This document shows positions 2,611 to 32,223 of a stretch of 64,000 nt of DNA, one piece after another; position 1 is the stretch's first letter; each line of letters begins with the position of its first letter. Where the stretch lies: the sequence record LR756502.1, one strand, 5' to 3'. The notes below the pieces were generated by a model. It had not been told where the DNA came from. It was given only the letters and a program-made list of their open reading frames with translations, and searched no databases. Both the position numbers and the translations under genes were made by a program.

Positions 2611-3537
2611 ATGAATAAGAATTCAAAAATTTATGTCGCTGGTCATAACGGAATGGTTGGATCATCAATACTTCGATTATTAATATCCGAGGGATATACT
2701 AATATCATTACAAAGAGTAAATCAGAACTTAATCTAGTTAACAAGCTTGATGTTGAATCTTTTTTCAAAATTGAACAACCTGAGTTTGTTTTTCTTGCTG
2801 CTGCAAAAGTTGGTGGTATTAATGCTAATATGAAAAACCCAGCTGGCTTTCTTTTTGAGAATATAGAAATTCAAAATAATGTAATTCATCAGTCTTATAT
2901 AAGTGGTGTTAAAAAACTATGCTTCTTAGGTAGCTCTTGTATATATCCTAGACAGTCAGAACAACCAATAAAAGAAGAATATCTATTAAGTGGTGATCTT
3001 GAGCCAACAAATGAGGGATATGCTTTGGCAAAAATTGTTGGGTTAAAAATGTTAAAATATTATAGTGATCAGTATGGATTTAATTCAGTTAGTCCTATGC
3101 CTTGTAACCTATATGGACCAAATGATAGCTTTGACCTAGAAAAGTCTCACGTTCTATCTGCTCTTATAAGAAGATTTGTTGATGCTAAAGATAAAAATGA
3201 TAGTGAGATTGTAATATGGGGAACAGGCATTGCTAGAAGAGAATTTATGCATGTTGATGATGTTGCATCTGCTTGTTTATTTTTAATGGAAAACTATAAT
3301 AACCCAGAACATATAAATATTGGATGGGGAAAGGATATATCCATAAAAGAATTAGTTGATTTGGTTAAAGAGAAGGTTGGTTTTGATGGTGTTGTTAAGT
3401 GGGATAGTTCTAAACCAGATGGAATGCTTAGAAAATGTTTAGATGTTACGAATATAAATAGCTTGGGATTTACTCCTAAAATAACTTTAAATAAAGGAAT
3501 TGATGAGATGATATCAATTTATAAAAAAATAAAATAA
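2611..3537 (+). CDS. fcl: GDP-L-fucose synthase / GDP-4-keto-6-deoxymannose epimerase-reductase (Fcl/ColC family)
   Basis: IYVAGHNGMVGS, LAAAKVGGI, FLGSSCIYP, YALAK, PCNLYGPND, WGTG..RREF. Confidence 0.95.
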   Translation: MNKNSKIYVAGHNGMVGSSILRLLISEGYTNIITKSKSELNLVNKLDVESFFKIEQPEFVFLAAAKVGGINANMKNPAGFLFENIEIQNNVIHQSYISGVKKLCFLGSSCIYPRQSEQPIKEEYLLSGDLEPTNEGYALAKIVGLKMLKYYSDQYGFNSVSPMPCNLYGPNDSFDLEKSHVLSALIRRFVDAKDKNDSEIVIWGTGIARREFMHVDDVASACLFLMENYNNPEHINIGWGKDISIKELVDLVKEKVGFDGVVKWDSSKPDGMLRKCLDVTNINSLGFTPKITLNKGIDEMISIYKKIK

Positions 3538-3540
3538 TTA

Positions 3541-4710
3541 ATGATACCACTTATGAAAAGTACGTTTCTAAATGAATTAGAAACAAAGAAGGCATTATCT
3601 GAATTTATAATAGATTCTAATAAGCTAAGTATGGGTGACAAATGTTTGGAGTTTGAAGATAAGTTTTCAAAAAAACAACTAAGTAAACACTCAGTGTTGG
3701 TAAATAGTGGAGCAAGTGCTAATCTTATAATACTACAATCTCTACTAAATCTAGGTAGATTGAAAGTTGGTGATAGAGTTGGCTTTTCCGCTGTTACTTG
3801 GTCTACAAATGTTATGCCTATAATTCAATTAGGTCTAGTTCCAGTTCCTATTGATTGTGATCCATCTACACTTAATTGTATGTCTACTAATCTAGAAGAC
3901 TCCAATAATATGGAAAGTATAGACGCTTTCTTCTTAACAAATGTTCTTGGGTTTGCTGGTGATATGATCAACATAAAGAAATATTGTGATTTAAATAAAA
4001 TAATTCTAATTGAGGATAATTGTGAATCTTTGGGTACTGTCGTTTCTGGTATAAAAACTGGAAACTATGGAGTGGCTTCGAGTTTTTCATTTTTTGTCGC
4101 ACATCATATGTCTACGATAGAAGGTGGTATGGTTTGTACATCGGATGATGATCTTGCTGAAATGTTAATTATAGTTAGAGCTAATGGATGGGATAGGAGT
4201 CTAAGTGACTCTCAACAAAAAAAGTGGAGGACTAAATATTCTATAAATGATTTTGAGTCAAAATATACATTCTATGACTTGGCCTACAATGTAAGACCAA
4301 CCGAAATAACTGGATTCCTTGGAATTGAGCAACTTAAGTATTTGGATGATAATATAAATATAAGAAATTCTAACTACTTTAGAATAAAGGATTCAGTTTC
4401 AAAGAATGATGATTTCATTTTACTTAATGAGAATGGGATTGATGTACTTTCAAGTTTTGCATTTCCTTTTGTTTGTAAGACTCCGGAGTTGCGTGAGCAT
4501 TATATAGATAAATTTACAGATGCTGGTGTTGAGTTAAGACCGATGATTGCTGGTAATATGTCAAACCAACCATTCTTTAAGAAGTATGTTAGTGAATCAT
4601 ATTTATTATCAGGTGCTGATAGACTACATGATTGTGGATTCTATTGTGGAAATTATCCTGAATTAACGGAAGATGACTTACAGACTATTGAGATGTTATT
4701 AAAAAAATAA
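3541..4710 (+). CDS. PLP/PMP-dependent sugar 3-dehydratase, ColD-like (DegT superfamily)
   Basis: VNSGASAN, EDNCESLG, SFFVAHHMSTIEGG with His replacing the aminotransferase Lys. Confidence 0.8.
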   Translation: MIPLMKSTFLNELETKKALSEFIIDSNKLSMGDKCLEFEDKFSKKQLSKHSVLVNSGASANLIILQSLLNLGRLKVGDRVGFSAVTWSTNVMPIIQLGLVPVPIDCDPSTLNCMSTNLEDSNNMESIDAFFLTNVLGFAGDMINIKKYCDLNKIILIEDNCESLGTVVSGIKTGNYGVASSFSFFVAHHMSTIEGGMVCTSDDDLAEMLIIVRANGWDRSLSDSQQKKWRTKYSINDFESKYTFYDLAYNVRPTEITGFLGIEQLKYLDDNINIRNSNYFRIKDSVSKNDDFILLNENGIDVLSSFAFPFVCKTPELREHYIDKFTDAGVELRPMIAGNMSNQPFFKKYVSESYLLSGADRLHDCGFYCGNYPELTEDDLQTIEMLLKK

Positions 4711-4713
4711 TAT

Positions 4714-30021: not shown

Positions 30022-30785
30022 TAGTATGTAAAATACAAGCTGGTTTGGGTAACCAATTGTTCCAATGGGCAGTTGCTAGATCCTATGCAATTGATCATAA
30101 CTGCGAGTATAAGTTTGAGACATCATTCTACCCTACTCAGACAAAGAGACAAGTTAAGTTAAATGAATTTAATATAAAATTTGAGTTAGTTACTCAATTA
30201 GATATAAACAGACCAGTATTGCAGATAAATGACACTTTTAACTTTATTGAACTTCCATATGATCCAAGTAATATAATTTTCTTAAATGGGTATTGGCAAT
30301 CGGAGAAGTATTTCTCTAGAAACAGTGATGTTATAAGAAATGAATTACTATCTGGTAGAGATATGAGTAAACTTAGTAAAACTCCATTCATTGATACAAA
30401 TACAGTTTCTATTCATATAAGAAGAACAGACTATACTGAATCAAATGGATATCATCCAGTTCAATCTATGGAATACTATGAAAAGGCAATTGCTGAAATA
30501 GGTAGTTATGATAAATTATTTGTATTCTCTGATGATATCAATTGGTGTAAAGAAAACCTGAAATTTAGAGATATGATATTTATGGAAGGATTTACTGATA
30601 TAGAGGATCTATTCATAATGTCTATGTGTAAGAACAATATAATTGCAAATTCTAGCTTTTCTTGGTGGGGTGCTTGGTTAAACAATAACCCTAATAAGAA
30701 AGTTGTTGCTCCAATTAATTGGTTTGGTCAACAGGCTAACATTAGTACTGCTGATATATTGCCAGAAAATTGGATAAAGATATGA
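30018..30785 (+). CDS. GT11 alpha-1,2-fucosyltransferase family
   Basis: AGLGNQLFQ, GYWQSEKYF, SIHIRRTDY, FSDD, NSSFSWWGAWL. Confidence 0.9.
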   Translation: MIVCKIQAGLGNQLFQWAVARSYAIDHNCEYKFETSFYPTQTKRQVKLNEFNIKFELVTQLDINRPVLQINDTFNFIELPYDPSNIIFLNGYWQSEKYFSRNSDVIRNELLSGRDMSKLSKTPFIDTNTVSIHIRRTDYTESNGYHPVQSMEYYEKAIAEIGSYDKLFVFSDDINWCKENLKFRDMIFMEGFTDIEDLFIMSMCKNNIIANSSFSWWGAWLNNNPNKKVVAPINWFGQQANISTADILPENWIKI

Positions 30786-31447
30786 TAAAAATATATTCAA
30801 TACATTATAATAAACCGGAGTATATTTCTTTGCAAAAGAAATCTATTGATGATTGTGTTAAGATTCCATATGAATTTATAGTACTTGATAATTCAATAGA
30901 TCCATCTATTAAGAGTAGAATAGTTGAAACAACATCATCTTTGAATATTGGATATGTTGATTGCTGTAATACTATAACATCAATGGATTCGTTATCACAC
31001 CAAAATGCACTAAGAAAATTTGTTAGTATTATAAACGATGGTGATACTGTTATGTTAATCGATCATGACTTGTTTTTTACTGGTGTTTTTGATGAAAGAT
31101 ATTATGATGGATATGATATGGCGTATATAAATCAAACAAGAGGAGTTGTTAACTATCCATCAACAACAATAGTTATATTTAATAATATAAGAAATAAGAA
31201 TGATATATCATTTAACTCTGGTAAGATACTAGATGAGAACTGTGATACAGGTGGGTTTATGTATTACTATATAACTAATAATAATTTAAAGATTAGGAAT
31301 ATAGGAGAAAGTTATTTACAAGATGGTAAATTATTAATCGCTAACCTTGATGATACATTTGTTCATTTAATCTCTGGGTCTGACTGGAATGGTAATTATG
31401 ACCTAGTTGGTAAATTAAATTATATAAAAGAAAAGTTTAACATATGA
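30770..31447 (+). CDS. Hypothetical GT-A-like protein
   Basis: VLDNS, LIDHDLF (DxD), CDTGG; island context. Confidence 0.5.
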   Translation: MDKDMIKIYSIHYNKPEYISLQKKSIDDCVKIPYEFIVLDNSIDPSIKSRIVETTSSLNIGYVDCCNTITSMDSLSHQNALRKFVSIINDGDTVMLIDHDLFFTGVFDERYYDGYDMAYINQTRGVVNYPSTTIVIFNNIRNKNDISFNSGKILDENCDTGGFMYYYITNNNLKIRNIGESYLQDGKLLIANLDDTFVHLISGSDWNGNYDLVGKLNYIKEKFNI

Positions 31448-32223
31448 AAGTTTTAGAAAGCGAAGTTGTATTTGTAACTACAACACTATATACAAAGTGG
31501 TTGGATTACCAATCGTCAATAATTAAAAGGTTATTTCCGGATAGTCAGCATATCATTGTTGATGGTAGAGGAAATTGGCCAAACTCTTGGTTCTACTGGG
31601 TTGATGAGATTAAAAAATCGGATAAGAAATATTATATTCATATTGATGAAGATTTTTTTATAACAAGTAAAGATGAGTTAATGAAAGTAGTTCAGAAGAT
31701 GGAAGATGAGTCTATTGATCTTATTGGGTGTCCAGATGGATATCATCACTATCGTGGCGCTAATCCGGTTGCTATAAATACACTAATAATGTTTGGTCGA
31801 GTTGCTGATGTTAAAAAGATAGATATTGACTTTCAACAGATAAAGTTTTCACTTGTTACTCATGATGGTGTTAGTTATTCTTGGACTAATAACTATGGTC
31901 TATCATTTAGAGAGGAATATAAGAAAGATTTTAACTTTAAACATAAGATACAGGGAGGTTCAAATTTTATTAATGATCACGAACCTTATTATGCTTTCTT
32001 ATGGGAGATGAAGGAGATTGGTTGTAAGTTTGAATATTTATATCCCTTTTTCGATGAGAGATTTAAATCAACAAACCCTAGAATCGATGAAGGTTCTGAA
32101 GATATTGGCATACACATGTGGTATACTAGACAGTGGAATAATGAGATGGATGTACACGGTGTTACTAATATTAGTAGATATAATGAAGTTGAAAAATATC
32201 TAAGAAAGATATATGAGTTCTAA
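31444..32223 (+). CDS. Hypothetical GT-A-like protein
   Basis: HIDEDFF DxD motif, HEPYY, GIHMWY; island context. Confidence 0.5.
   Translation: MKVLESEVVFVTTTLYTKWLDYQSSIIKRLFPDSQHIIVDGRGNWPNSWFYWVDEIKKSDKKYYIHIDEDFFITSKDELMKVVQKMEDESIDLIGCPDGYHHYRGANPVAINTLIMFGRVADVKKIDIDFQQIKFSLVTHDGVSYSWTNNYGLSFREEYKKDFNFKHKIQGGSNFINDHEPYYAFLWEMKEIGCKFEYLYPFFDERFKSTNPRIDEGSEDIGIHMWYTRQWNNEMDVHGVTNISRYNEVEKYLRKIYEF

What the first reader, a model, noticed from the sequence alone, without database searches (positions are those of the whole stretch)
2611..32223. ~30-kb glycan biosynthesis island inside a phage
Seen: about 27 co-oriented sugar genes (nucleotide-sugar synthesis, four GT11, GT6, GT17, several GT2/GT-A, two GT47-like, four methyltransferase domains, acyltransferase, ACP), but no recognisable flippase, polymerase or undecaprenyl priming transferase. 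Known: bacterial O-antigen/capsule loci normally carry export and polymerisation genes; giant viruses and some T4-like cyanophages carry glycosylation genes. Inference: the product is a cytoplasmically built glycan on virion proteins (or DNA), not a host surface polymer, i.e. an autonomous phage glycosylation system.
Basis: partly seen in the sequence, partly recalled or inferred. Interest (0 to 1): 0.68.

Follow-up and report, generated by a model that had tools for sequence, protein, structure and literature searches.

The report
Variable sugar-coat gene island in megaphage
A 642-kb lake phage carries a real 30-kb block of soluble sugar-building enzymes, with no membrane export machinery anywhere in its genome and different contents in each related phage, so it most likely decorates a phage protein with a complex glycan inside the infected cell, although remodelling of the host surface is not excluded.

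Summary
Window 2611-32223 has 30 co-oriented ORFs. 27 are glycan-related or unassigned: 12 GT domains (3 GT2, GT6, 4 GT11-type, GT17, 2 GT114/A075L-like, 1 new GT-A), sugar-tailoring enzymes and 4 methyltransferase domains. A ClpB-like chaperone and two unknown genes sit inside the block.

The window is LR756502.1:434001-498000, a curated 642-kb "huge phage". Island GC and GC3 match the rest of the genome, and relatives share the flanks, so it is not a bacterial mis-join.

Neither this phage nor its 635-kb relative has a priming transferase, Wzx, Wzy/ligase, ABC-2 permease or sugar nucleotidylyltransferase. No island protein has a TM helix. Bacterial loci with the same GT11 carry polytopic membrane proteins in 26 of 39 cases, against 0 of 9 distinct phage loci (p = 0.0003).

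The locus is hypervariable. The frame is fixed (ClpB on the left; GT11, a phage-specific GT-A and a β-sandwich protein on the right), but the cassettes between differ in each phage.

Cytoplasmic assembly is well supported. A virion protein as target is plausible but unshown. DNA is unlikely. "Autonomous" is overstated, because the phage needs host-activated sugars. Similar clusters are known in cyanophages, so this is a new variant of a known kind.

The parts
2225..2234 (+). Only exact copy in the island of the phage promoter-like box TTAATATATA. It lies 31 nt before the ATG of the first gene of the array.
   Evidence: Motif discovery and spacing classes. MCP, portal and TerL have the box at the same spacing.
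2258..2569 (+). First ORF of the co-directional array (103 aa, unknown function).
2611..3537 (+). GDP-L-fucose synthase / GDP-colitose synthase (Fcl/ColC)-like SDR.
   Evidence: NCBIfam GDPFucSynFcl 417 bits, against a cut-off of 500.
3541..4710 (+). ColD-type GDP-4-keto-6-deoxymannose 3-dehydratase. The active-site His is kept.
   Evidence: PDB 2gms (ColD) E = 1e-58; 'VAHH' aligns with ColD 'YSHH'.
4714..5544 (+). FkbM-family methyltransferase.
   Evidence: Pfam E = 2.7e-12.
5547..6517 (+). Two conserved unknown ORFs (193 and 129 aa). They form part of the fixed left frame of the locus.
   Evidence: 38-41% identical counterparts in LR745206; also found in L057.
6544..8667 (+). ClpB/ClpC-like double-AAA+ chaperone. 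It belongs to the fixed left frame and is not a sugar gene.
   Evidence: Pfam and NCBIfam ClpB 872 bits; 61-84% identity in relatives.
8665..8706 (+). 18-bp hairpin terminator after the ClpB-like gene. A hairpin is kept at this position in five phages and is followed by a TTTATAT box.
8750..9475 (+). GT2 glycosyltransferase.
   Evidence: Pfam E = 1.4e-10.
9475..11067 (+). GT2 - GT6 fusion with a C-terminal Cys4 tail. The GT6 half keeps the DVD and WHDESHLNKY motifs.
   Evidence: Pfam GT6 E = 4e-44; human ABO transferase and BoGT6a E = 2e-35.
11099..12400 (+). E1/RfbH-type NDP-6-deoxy-4-hexulose 3-dehydrase (His in place of Lys; Cys-rich insert).
   Evidence: NCBIfam RfbH 357 bits; motif SFYPAHH.
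12388..13806 (+). RmlD-like reductase fragment fused to GT2.
13799..15150 (+). DUF5672 and DUF3431 proteins. They are candidate glycosyltransferases, unproven.
   Evidence: Pfam; no PDB sequence match.
15147..16073 (+). Divergent GT11-like protein lacking the HxRRxD motif.
16156..17064 (+). GT17-family glycosyltransferase.
   Evidence: Pfam E = 5.6e-22.
17068..19671 (+). SDR fused to an NDP-hexose C-methyltransferase (branched-chain sugar).
   Evidence: Pfam Methyltransf_13/14 plus Epimerase.
19659..21612 (+). Tandem pair of GT114 (A075L-like, formerly 'GT47-like') glycosyltransferases, 58% identical to each other.
   Evidence: PDB 8Q8I/8AVQ/8ASA, E = 6e-20 and 7e-21.
21629..22390 (+). NadE-family ATP-dependent amidoligase, inferred to amidate a uronic acid.
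   Evidence: TIGR00552 172 bits. Fused to a GT114 domain in L060. Always next to the sugar dehydrogenase.
22387..23640 (+). NDP-sugar 6-dehydrogenase.
23630..24463 (+). Class I SAM methyltransferase.
24468..25919 (+). SDR epimerase/dehydratase fused to a NeuD/VioB-like hexapeptide acetyltransferase.
25919..26921 (+). An unknown 238-aa ORF and a 99-aa carrier-protein-like ORF (weak).
26937..27749 (+). GT11 with variant motif HIRGGD.
27764..28354 (+). Short DegT-like protein (196 aa), conserved in L056 and L060.
28354..29133 (+). GT11 with variant motif HMRGCD; 56% identical paralogue of the ORF at 26937.
29152..30021 (+). Weak methyltransferase-like ORF.
30018..30785 (+). Canonical GT11 (HIRRTD). 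Part of the fixed right frame.
   Evidence: Pfam E = 3e-27; motif; present in nearly all related loci.
30770..31447 (+). Unknown 225-aa ORF.
31444..32223 (+). Phage-specific GT-A with an invariant H-x-D-E-D box. It is the anchor of the right frame and a candidate for the transferase that recognises the conserved acceptor.
32213..32425 (+). Conserved 70-aa ORF that ends the array.
33021..34898 (-). Neighbouring core megaphage protein, not shown to belong to the system. It has β-sandwich domains, a hypervariable G/T/S/N-rich linker and a disordered S/T-rich tail. It is a candidate virion protein and a speculative acceptor.

Best explanation
The island is a native, hypervariable glycan-assembly locus of a 642-kb megaphage that probably infects Bacteroidota.

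All of its enzymes are soluble. They take nucleotide sugars activated by the host and tailor them. The predicted products are:
- a GDP-colitose or fucose-type sugar, made by ColD plus an Fcl/ColC-like enzyme from host GDP-4-keto-6-deoxymannose;
- a second 3,6-dideoxyhexose, made by the E1-like dehydrase;
- a C-methyl branched sugar;
- a uronic acid that a NadE-like enzyme probably amidates;
- N-acetylated and O-methylated sugars.

Twelve GT domains then assemble a hetero-oligosaccharide in the cytoplasm. The GT11 and GT6 enzymes are expected to build a fucosylated, blood-group-like motif. The two GT114 enzymes probably extend it.

The phage has no lipid-carrier priming, flipping, polymerising or exporting protein. 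I therefore take the most likely acceptor to be a phage-encoded protein, probably a virion component, glycosylated before lysis, as in chloroviruses, mimiviruses and mycobacteriophages.

The conserved GT11 and phage-specific GT-A at the right end would lay down a conserved inner part on that acceptor. The swappable cassettes would diversify the outer part.

Shown: gene content, solubility, absence of export genes, phage origin and locus variability. Inferred: sugar identities, order of action and, above all, the acceptor.
For: 1. Phage origin
- 100% identity to LR756502.1.
- GC 31.2% and GC3 22.6%, against 31.6% and 23.7% for the rest of the genome.
- Logan contigs span window 1-6000.

2. No membrane machinery
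- Zero hits for Bac_transf, Glycos_transf_4, Polysacc_synt, Wzy_C and ABC2_membrane in both megaphage genomes, while these ring in 10-14 of 14 control genomes.
- No TM helix in any island ORF.
- The only polytopic ORF in the genome is a repeat-rich tape-measure-like protein.
- No polytopic protein among 317 ORFs of 13 related loci.
- Positive control: 26 of 39 bacterial GT11 loci have a protein with 6 or more TM segments within 10 kb, against 0 of 9 distinct phage loci, p = 0.0003.

3. Virus-type GT repertoire
- Two paralogues of PBCV-1 A075L, a cytosolic capsid-glycan xylosyltransferase that acts on fucose.
- No GT4/Glycos_transf_1 at all.
- The anchor GT-A family is about 90% viral in the ESM Atlas. 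Among 50,697 GenBank phage records it occurs only in the two megaphages.

4. Fixed frame with variable cassettes across relatives.

5. Promoter type
- The array is headed by the phage's own TTAATATATA box at the 25-40 nt spacing also seen before MCP, portal and TerL.
- That spacing class is enriched in the structural region (p = 0.0012), and the array has no host-type TAnnTTTG box.

6. Neighbouring protein
- The adjacent core protein at 33021-34898 is made of β-sandwich domains with hypervariable disordered S/T/G/N segments.
- Its weak homologue in a Flavobacterium phage lies between genes annotated as baseplate proteins.
Against: - No acceptor was identified, and there are no glycoproteomic or expression data. 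No RNA run holds the locus.
- Bacterial O-antigen GTs are also soluble or peripheral, so lack of TM helices does not exclude action on a host-primed lipid carrier.
- 3,6-Dideoxyhexoses and GT2 domains resembling PglI and TuaG are typical of bacterial surface polysaccharides.
- The published reading of comparable cyanophage clusters is host-surface remodelling.
- The promoter argument is weak. About 200 genes carry the same box, the timing of the spacing classes is unknown, and a terminator after the ClpB-like gene separates most of the island from the box.
- The structural neighbours of the anchor GT are a flat list of generic GT-A folds, Z 11.7 down to 9.8.
Confidence: 0.47

Rival explanations
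1. Host-surface remodelling. The soluble phage GTs extend a host-primed undecaprenyl-PP sugar. Host Wzx or Wzm/Wzt and the host ligase then export the new glycan. This changes the LPS, capsule or O-glycoproteins of the infected cell during a long latent period. The effect would be to block superinfection or to alter recognition by grazers.
For: - The sugars are O-antigen-like. There is a ColD/ColC-type colitose route and an E1/RfbH-type dehydrase.
- The GT2 domain of the ORF at 12388 is most similar to the lipid-linked-acceptor enzymes PglI and TuaG.
- The closest bacterial homologues of the conserved GT11 are in Bacteroidota, mostly in loci with Wzx/Wzy-sized membrane proteins.
- A hypervariable, O-antigen-locus-like architecture fits a surface glycan.
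- This is the published reading of the P-SSM2-type clusters.
Against: - The phage supplies none of the membrane steps, in contrast to 26 of 39 bacterial loci.
- Host Wzx, Wzy and ligase are usually selective for their own unit, so a foreign 10+-sugar glycan is a poor substrate (general knowledge, not tested here).
- The conserved anchor GT-A is a virus-specific family.
- The array is headed by a phage-type rather than a host-type promoter box.
- Known seroconverting phages use membrane proteins such as GtrABC or O-acetyltransferases (general knowledge). None is present here.
Confidence: 0.33
2. A soluble or lipid glycoconjugate that is neither a virion nor a surface polymer. Examples would be a glycosylated small molecule or glycolipid that uses the carrier-protein-like ORF, C-methyl and deoxy sugars as in natural-product pathways, or glycosylation of a non-structural phage or host protein.
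For: - The deoxy, C-methyl and O-methyl sugar toolkit and a possible carrier protein resemble natural-product sugar pathways.
- No acceptor is known.
Against: - No PKS, NRPS or aglycone-forming enzyme was found in the window's Pfam scans.
- Twelve GT domains point to a long glycan rather than a decorated aglycone.
- The carrier-protein call is weak (E = 0.011).
Confidence: 0.1
3. Glycosylation of the phage DNA (base hypermodification) to evade restriction.
For: - Phage GTs are classically DNA-modifying enzymes.
- A separate mini-locus at LR756502 550-555 kb has a GT2, GalE and a MazG-like pyrophosphatase.
Against: - There is a single ThyA-family gene. It scores 325 bits as thymidylate synthase and keeps the dUMP-type Asn (PFNIASY), so there is no evident hmC route.
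- The GT families here (GT6, GT11, GT17, GT114) act on sugar acceptors in every characterised member (general knowledge).
- Twelve GT domains and dideoxy or branched sugars far exceed known DNA glycans.
Confidence: 0.04
4. Artefact: a bacterial polysaccharide locus mis-joined into the phage assembly.
For: The gene content resembles bacterial O-antigen loci.
Against: - Composition is identical to the rest of the genome.
- The same frame and flanks occur in LR745206 and in 12 IMG/VR contigs of up to 476 kb.
- Independent Logan contigs of 22.9 and 9.5 kb span the left junction without a single difference, and a contig from another sample bridges 2065-3116.
- The genome was reported as manually curated and circularised (PMC7162821).
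Confidence: 0.01

Closest known systems
'LPS'/cell-wall gene clusters of T4-like cyanophages (P-SSM2, P-SSM5, S-SCSM1, S-SCSM2R, ACG-2014f)
   Same: - Both are large blocks of soluble GTs and sugar epimerases in lytic myoviruses.
- They share GT6 (42% identity to the P-SSM2 enzyme) and GT11 homologues, sometimes as neighbours.
- Gene content varies between relatives, and the function is untested.
   Different: - Here all genes lie in one contiguous array of about 30 kb, in a 642-kb Mahaphage with a predicted Bacteroidota host.
- The locus has a fixed frame with swappable cassettes.
- It adds GT114, GT17, two 3-deoxygenases, a C-methyltransferase and a NadE-like enzyme.
- It has no nucleotidylyltransferase, whereas these are reported in cyanophage clusters.
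Chlorovirus PBCV-1 capsid (Vp54) glycosylation machinery (A064R, A075L and others)
   Same: - Both use virus-encoded, cytosolic GTs with no lipid-carrier or export step.
- Two island proteins are sequence homologues of A075L (E about 1e-20).
- The chemistry is rich in fucose-type sugars, and methyltransferases are present.
   Different: - The host is a bacterium, not an alga.
- The acceptor is unknown here.
- Similarity to A064R is only at the generic GT-A fold level.
- The A075L catalytic residues were not checked.
Mycobacteriophage virion glycosylation (Freeman et al. 2023, as cited in PMC12619734)
   Same: In both cases phage-encoded GTs would modify virion subunits in the cytoplasm. Disordered, S/T-rich terminal segments of structural proteins are the plausible acceptor sites.
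   Different: - Those phages carry one to a few GTs, not a 30-kb locus.
- Glycosylation there was demonstrated; here it is inferred.
- I could not read the primary paper.
Bacterial Wzx/Wzy- or ABC-dependent O-antigen and capsule loci
   Same: - Both have a hypervariable cassette region between conserved flanks.
- Both have 3,6-dideoxyhexose pathways, and GT2, GT11 and GT6 enzymes.
- The bacterial homologues are mostly in Bacteroidota.
   Different: - There is no priming transferase, flippase, polymerase, chain-length regulator, ABC exporter or ligase in the island or the genome.
- There is no GT4.

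Membership tests
Wzx/Wzy-dependent O-antigen or capsule locus | Polyprenyl-phosphate priming transferase (Bac_transf or WecA/MraY type) | tested here: not met
   PF02397 and PF00953 give 0 hits in LR756502 and LR745206, while the controls ring.
Wzx/Wzy-dependent O-antigen or capsule locus | Wzx flippase and Wzy polymerase or ligase (polytopic membrane proteins) | tested here: not met
   PF01943 and PF04932 give 0 hits. The TM scan finds no polytopic protein except a tape-measure-like ORF 260 kb away. 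The scan detects such proteins in 26 of 39 bacterial loci.
ABC-transporter-dependent polysaccharide pathway | Wzm ABC-2 permease and Wzt ATPase | tested here: not met
   PF01061 gives 0 hits. PF00005 gives only weak P-loop matches, best 27.5 bits, with no permease partner.
Virus-encoded cytoplasmic protein glycosylation (PBCV-1 / mimivirus type) | Virus-encoded soluble GTs homologous to enzymes of such a system | tested here: met
   The ORFs at 19659 and 20626 match A075L at E = 6e-20 and 7e-21. All island proteins lack TM helices.
Virus-encoded cytoplasmic protein glycosylation (PBCV-1 / mimivirus type) | The glycan is covalently attached to a virion protein | not testable with these tools
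   This needs virion glycoproteomics. Only indirect hints were found.
Virus-encoded cytoplasmic protein glycosylation (PBCV-1 / mimivirus type) | The virus makes its own nucleotide sugars | tested here: inconclusive
   Tailoring enzymes are present. There is no nucleotidylyltransferase and no Gmd, so the precursors come from the host.
Cyanophage P-SSM2-type glycan cluster | Cluster of GTs and sugar epimerases in a lytic myovirus, sharing GT6 and GT11 homologues | tested here: met
   GT6 is found in 72 and GT11 in 103 phage records, nearly all cyanophages, at 30-42% identity.
T4-type DNA glucosylation | A hydroxymethyl-pyrimidine pathway (dCMP hydroxymethylase) to supply the acceptor base | tested here: not met
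   The single ThyA-family gene scores 325 bits as thymidylate synthase and has Asn at the dUMP-specifying position. hmU is not excluded.
CAZy GT6 | GT-A with a DxD motif and the conserved HDESHLNKY region holding the catalytic Glu | tested here: met
   DVD and WHDESHLNKY align with human GTA/GTB (E = 2e-35). BoGT6a matches at a similar E-value (2.3e-35). From memory, bacterial GT6 enzymes such as BoGT6a replace the DxD with NxN; that alignment was not inspected here.
CAZy GT11 (α1,2-fucosyltransferase) | Motif I, HxRRxD | tested here: inconclusive
   The ORF at 30018 has HIRRTD. Those at 26937 and 28354 have HIRGGD and HMRGCD. The ORF at 15147 lacks the motif.
CAZy GT114 (A075L) | Sequence homology to A075L, with catalytic Asp73 and phosphate-binding Arg158 and Arg208 | tested here: inconclusive
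   Homology covers A075L residues 68-281.
ColD (GDP-4-keto-6-deoxymannose 3-dehydratase) | DegT fold with His replacing the PLP-binding Lys | tested here: met
   The best PDB hit is ColD (E = 1e-58). The query 'AHH' aligns with ColD 'SHH', and the H188N mutant entry marks the position.
Acyl/peptidyl carrier protein | PP-binding fold with the phosphopantetheinylated Ser in a D-S-L-type motif | tested here: inconclusive
   PF00550 scores E = 0.011, below its cut-off. A GGYVDSFS motif is present.

The most novel reading that the evidence does not exclude
A lineage of megaphages carries a 'virion serotype' locus. It has a fixed frame (ClpB-like gene on the left; GT11, a phage-specific GT-A and a β-sandwich structural protein on the right) and freely exchanged sugar cassettes between. 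The locus would build, entirely in the cytoplasm, a diversifying blood-group-like, dideoxyhexose-bearing glycan on virion proteins. This would be the bacteriophage counterpart of giant-virus capsid glycosylation and of bacterial O-antigen variation. It would also include a new enzyme activity: a NadE-family amidoligase, fused to a GT114 domain in one relative, that makes sugar uronamides.
Probability: 0.33. Interest if true: 0.8.

Novelty: new variant of a known kind. Interest (0 to 1): 0.56.

Why it matters
What the large glycosyltransferase clusters of big phages do has been an open question since P-SSM2 in 2005. The usual guess is host-surface remodelling, and it has never been tested.

This locus is an unusually clean test case:
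- It has 12 GT domains in one array, with no membrane component anywhere in a complete 642-kb genome.
- It has homologues of a giant-virus capsid-glycan enzyme.
- It has a conserved anchor pair, GT11 plus a phage-specific GT-A, that can be expressed with candidate acceptors.

If virion glycosylation is confirmed, it would extend self-encoded virion glycosylation from giant eukaryotic viruses and mycobacteriophages to megaphages of Gram-negative bacteria. It would also imply serotype-like diversification of phage particles.

The island is in addition a source of soluble enzymes for rare sugars: colitose-type, C-methyl and uronamide sugars, and a DxD-type GT6 from a phage.

Tried and rejected
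- The only polytopic ORF in the genome (LR756502 175557-178544, 995 aa, 16 hydrophobic segments) was checked as a possible flippase or polymerase. It has no Pfam hit, carries internal repeats and coiled-coil ends, and lies among large genes in the region that holds the sheath gene. I read it as tape-measure-like, not Wzx/Wzy.
- The ABC_tran hits are weak P-loop matches without a permease partner.
- The strong GDP_Man_Dehyd hit at 553 kb is GalE, not Gmd.
- NadE was first read as an unrelated NAD-synthesis gene. I rejected that because it is fused to a GT114 domain in L060 and always lies next to the sugar dehydrogenase.
- The fold of the anchor GT-A gave only a flat list of GT-A neighbours: PBCV-1 A64R at Z 11.7, tied with LH3, B4GALNT1 and Fringe. 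No function can be read from it.
- The fold of the neighbouring protein at 33021-34898 gave only generic Ig/FN3-like β-sandwich matches at TM about 0.12. The ESM Atlas search was blank.
- No RNA run holds the locus, so expression and timing could not be tested.
- The sigma-70 consensus scan found no more sites than in shuffled sequence.
- A joint in run X3 that would delete 2207-5552 rests on a 20-nt side and is too weak to call.
- Complex prediction was also not used, because I do not claim any specific binding pair.

Full report
**Identity of the window**

The window is 100% identical to LR756502.1, positions 434001-498000. This is a 642,428-bp 'uncultured phage' and one of the four largest complete, curated genomes of Al-Shayeb et al. 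2020. That paper predicts Bacteroidetes hosts for these phages, and its main text does not mention glycosylation or polysaccharides. [quoted passage not shown]

No whole genome was held as G000, so I fetched the record in 33 pieces and rebuilt it. It has 934 non-overlapping ORFs, is 93.7% coding under table 11, and contains no N.

The flanks of the island look like a phage:
- a gp32-like SSB, endonuclease VII, RNR β and an RnlA-like ligase;
- DnaK and DnaJ.

A gp23-type MCP, a T4-type portal, TerL and a tail sheath lie elsewhere in the genome.

**The observation**

Window 2611-32223 holds 30 ORFs, all on the + strand. Three are not sugar genes: two conserved unknowns (5547, 6128) and a 707-aa ClpB/ClpC-like double AAA+ protein (6544).

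The glycosyltransferases comprise 12 GT domains in 11 proteins:
- GT2 at 8750, in the N-terminal half of 9475 and in the C-terminal half of 12388.
- GT6 in the C-terminal half of 9475. It aligns with human ABO transferases (E = 2e-35) and keeps the DVD and WHDESHLNKY motifs; BoGT6a matches at a similar E-value.
- Four GT11-type proteins. Only 30018 has the canonical HxRRxD motif. 26937 and 28354 have variants, and 15147 lacks it.
- GT17 at 16156.
- Two tandem paralogues, 19659 and 20626 (58% identical). They have no Pfam hit but match PDB 8Q8I/8AVQ/8ASA at E about 1e-20. That protein is A075L of chlorovirus PBCV-1, a cytosolic GT-B β-xylosyltransferase. It adds xylose to fucose in the capsid-protein glycan and founded CAZy GT114 after first being filed as exostosin/GT47.
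- The ORF at 31444 is a GT-A by predicted fold, with an invariant H-x-D-E-D box.

DUF5672 (13799) and DUF3431 (14458) may be further GTs.

**Sugar chemistry (inferred from families)**

- *Colitose cassette.* The ORF at 3541 is a ColD-type GDP-4-keto-6-deoxymannose 3-dehydratase: its best PDB hit is ColD at E = 1e-58, and the His that replaces the PLP lysine is kept. The gene before it (2611) is Fcl/ColC-like at 417 bits. Together they look like a GDP-colitose (3-deoxy-fucose) cassette.
- *Second 3-deoxygenase.* The ORF at 11099 is an E1/RfbH-type 3-dehydrase at 357 bits, with the SFYPAHH motif and a Cys-rich insert.
- *Other tailoring enzymes.* 17068 fuses an SDR to an NDP-hexose C-methyltransferase. 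22387 is an NDP-sugar 6-dehydrogenase. 24468 fuses an SDR to a NeuD/VioB-like acetyltransferase. There are also three further methyltransferase domains.
- *NadE-family protein.* The ORF at 21629 scores well above the NadE cut-off. However, in three phages it always sits beside the sugar dehydrogenase. In locus L060 it is fused in one 588-aa ORF to a GT114 domain: residues 5-320 are 51% identical to 20626, and residues 326-583 are 65% identical to 21629. I therefore infer a sugar-carboxylate amidoligase that makes a uronamide. I know of no such activity for this family.
- *GT11 with GT6.* Characterised GT6 enzymes need a Fucα1-2Gal acceptor (general knowledge). GT11 and GT6 together therefore predict a blood-group-A/B-like motif. 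The same pair lies 1.5 kb apart in cyanophage ACG-2014f.
- *Dependence on the host.* The phage has GalE elsewhere. It has no sugar-1-P nucleotidylyltransferase and no Gmd, so every pathway starts from a host-activated sugar.

**Absence of export and priming genes**

In both LR756502 and its 635-kb relative LR745206, five families gave no hit: Bac_transf, Glycos_transf_4, Polysacc_synt, Wzy_C and ABC2_membrane. The same searches ring in 10-14 of 14 control genomes. ABC_tran gave only weak P-loop matches.

Wzy proteins are too divergent for profile searches, so I also ran a hydropathy scan that does not depend on families:
- No island ORF has a TM segment.
- The only polytopic ORF in the genome is a repeat-rich, tape-measure-like protein 260 kb away.
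- None of 317 ORFs in 13 related loci is polytopic.

As a positive control, I ran the same scan on bacterial loci that carry a homologue of the conserved GT11. These are 36-45% identical and mostly from Bacteroidota. The scan found a protein with at least 6 TM segments within 10 kb in 26 of 39 loci, against 0 of 9 distinct phage loci (Fisher p = 0.0003). The genome also lacks any Glycos_transf_1 (GT4) enzyme, which is a very common family in bacterial polysaccharide loci (general knowledge).

**Not an artefact**

- Island GC is 31.2% and GC3 is 22.6%. The rest of the genome has 31.6 ± 2.7% and 23.7 ± 3.9%.
- Logan contigs of 22.9 and 9.5 kb from two runs (possibly the source samples) cover window 1-6000 without a single difference. 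A contig from another sample bridges 2065-3116.
- The same locus, with the same flanks, exists in related phages, as described next.

**Locus architecture across relatives**

I used the ORF at 31444 as a probe and recovered 12 IMG/VR loci, on contigs of up to 476 kb. Together with LR745206 they show a fixed frame.

- Left side: homologues of 5547 and 6128, then the ClpB-like gene (61-84% identity). In all five phages compared, ClpB is followed by a hairpin terminator and a TTTATAT box.
- Right side: the GT11 (30018-like) and the GT-A (31444-like, 49-73% identity). Beyond them, on the other strand, lie homologues of 32406, 33021, 34946 and 35344, endonuclease VII and gp32.

Between the two sides, the gene content differs in every phage. 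The region between ClpB and the anchor is 7 kb in L057, 9 kb in L054, 14 kb in LR745206 and 22.7 kb here.

A Pfam census of 104 ORFs from eight such loci found glycan families throughout its top-25 list:

| Family | ORFs |
|---|---|
| GT11 | 13 |
| SDR | 12 |
| GT2 | 11 |
| FkbM | 7 |
| Polysacc_synt_2 | 7 |
| RXYLT1_C | 5 |
| UDP-galactopyranose mutase | 3 |
| GT17 | 3 |
| GT31 | 3 |
| C-methyltransferase | 3 |
| NadE | 2 |
| GT6 | 2 |

No export family appears among the top 25 families. The colitose cassette (2258-5544) lies left of the frame and has no counterpart in LR745206.

This is the architecture of an O-antigen locus, but in a phage lineage. It suggests that the glycan is exposed and under diversifying selection.

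**What is the acceptor?**

This is the unresolved point. Four observations favour a phage protein:
- The phage contributes nothing to lipid-linked assembly or export.
- The anchor GT-A belongs to a family that is about 90% viral in the ESM Atlas. Among 50,697 GenBank phage records it is found only in the two megaphages. This fits an acceptor that is specific to the phage.
- Two GTs are homologues of a capsid-glycan enzyme.
- A genome-wide motif, TTAATATATA, occurs 339 times, and 199 genes have it within 120 nt upstream. It shows two spacing classes. The 25-40 nt class precedes MCP, portal, TerL and the tail-region genes and is enriched in the structural region (p = 0.0012). The only exact copy in the island sits 31 nt before the first gene of the array. 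By contrast, MgtC and DnaK carry the Bacteroidetes-type TAnnTTTG box.

The promoter argument is weak, because the timing of the two classes is unknown and a terminator follows the ClpB-like gene.

The neighbouring core protein at 33021-34898 may be relevant:
- It has homologues in all the largest megaphages.
- Its model shows β-sandwich domains plus a disordered linker (residues 359-455) and a disordered tail (552-625). In relatives these segments are hypervariable G/T/S/N repeats.
- Its weak homologue in Flavobacterium phage MaF61 lies between genes annotated as baseplate proteins.

It is a candidate virion protein and a speculative acceptor, nothing more.

Three observations argue against a phage protein as acceptor:
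- Bacterial O-antigen GTs are also soluble or peripheral.
- Dideoxyhexoses are classic O-antigen sugars.
- Host WecA-type priming together with a tolerant host exporter could carry a phage-built chain to the surface. That is the published guess for the cyanophage clusters.

DNA is an unlikely target. The single ThyA-family gene keeps the dUMP-type Asn, and these GT families act on sugar acceptors.

**Comparison with what is known, and verdict**

Large GT clusters in lytic phages have been known since P-SSM2, which has 24 'LPS' genes. Their polymorphism in cyanophages has been noted. A 2025 paper GTs possibly the highest number in a marine phage and still offers only speculation about their function.

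This island is therefore not a new kind of thing. It is a distinct variant for four reasons:
- It is a single 30-kb array in a megaphage of Bacteroidota.
- It has a fixed frame with exchangeable cassettes.
- It contains giant-virus-type GT114 enzymes and a phage-specific anchor GT-A.
- It suggests a possible new NadE-type sugar amidation.

I found no description of it in the papers that mention this genome.

| Explanation | Confidence |
|---|---|
| Cytoplasmic glycosylation of a phage (virion) protein | 0.47 |
| Host-surface remodelling through host machinery | 0.33 |
| Other glycoconjugate | 0.10 |
| DNA modification | 0.04 |
| Assembly artefact | 0.01 |

Noticed in passing
window 685-1198: A GOLLD RNA (685-1091, + strand, 275 bits against a gathering score of 150) is followed 9 nt later by a tRNA-like gene (1101-1174). 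Its anticodon loop has only 6 nt (UUUUCA), so ARAGORN reports a two-base anticodon. A hairpin terminator follows at 1178-1198.
   Followed up: partly
window 6544-8667 (+), 48830-49891 (-), 60282-62165 (+): The phage encodes a ClpB/ClpC-like disaggregase, DnaJ (372 bits) and DnaK (971 bits) within 56 kb. Together these look like a complete bichaperone set. The ClpB-like gene is the fixed left border of the glycan locus in all relatives.
   Followed up: partly
whole LR756502 genome; window 2225-2234: The promoter-like motif TTAATATATA occurs 339 times, and 199 genes have it within 120 nt upstream. It sits either 12-13 nt (110 genes) or 25-40 nt (67 genes) before the ATG. The longer spacing marks MCP, portal, TerL and the tail genes. 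A Bacteroidetes-type TAnnTTTG box precedes MgtC and DnaK.
   Followed up: partly
L060:4070-5836 (IMGVR_UViG_3300043411_003039): A single 588-aa ORF fuses a GT114-like domain to a NadE-like domain. The two are separate adjacent genes in the window (20626-21612 and 21629-22390). This Rosetta-stone link suggests that the NadE-family enzyme amidates a sugar acid.
   Followed up: partly
window 1266-1733 and 1737-2228: An MgtC-family membrane protein (E = 9e-35) and a weak FemAB-like ORF lie just upstream of the island. The FemAB-like gene is conserved in LR745206 (58% identity); MgtC is not.
   Followed up: no
LR756502 550272-554867 (L030:10272-14867): A second small sugar-related locus holds a GT2 (390 aa), PRPP synthetase, an unknown ORF, GalE (E = 1e-100 to solved GalE structures) and a MazG-like pyrophosphohydrolase. 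GalE could supply UDP-Gal or UDP-GalNAc to the GT6. The MazG and GT2 pairing could instead hint at nucleotide or DNA modification.
   Followed up: partly
window 33021-34898 (-): A core protein of the largest megaphages, with hits in LR756500, LR756501, LR756503 and LR756504. It has β-sandwich domains, a hypervariable G/T/S/N-repeat linker and a disordered S/T-rich tail. Its weak homologue in Flavobacterium phage MaF61 (ORF102) lies between genes annotated as baseplate proteins. This also supports a Bacteroidota host.
   Followed up: partly
window 2207-5552: One Logan contig of run X3 joins 2206 to 5553. This would remove exactly the ORF at 2258 plus the colitose cassette and recreate the gene order of LR745206. 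The shorter side of the joint is only 20 nt, so a cassette-less variant in the population is possible but not shown.
   Followed up: no
LR756502 175557-178544 (L011:15557-18544): A 995-aa ORF has 16 or more hydrophobic segments arranged as internal repeats between coiled-coil ends, and no Pfam hit. It lies upstream of the sheath gene among large, mostly unannotated genes. I read it as tape-measure-like or as an ejection protein.
   Followed up: partly
window 45977-47053: A GMP reductase / IMP dehydrogenase-family gene (129 bits to GMP reductase, below the cut-off) lies in the replication-side flank.
   Followed up: no
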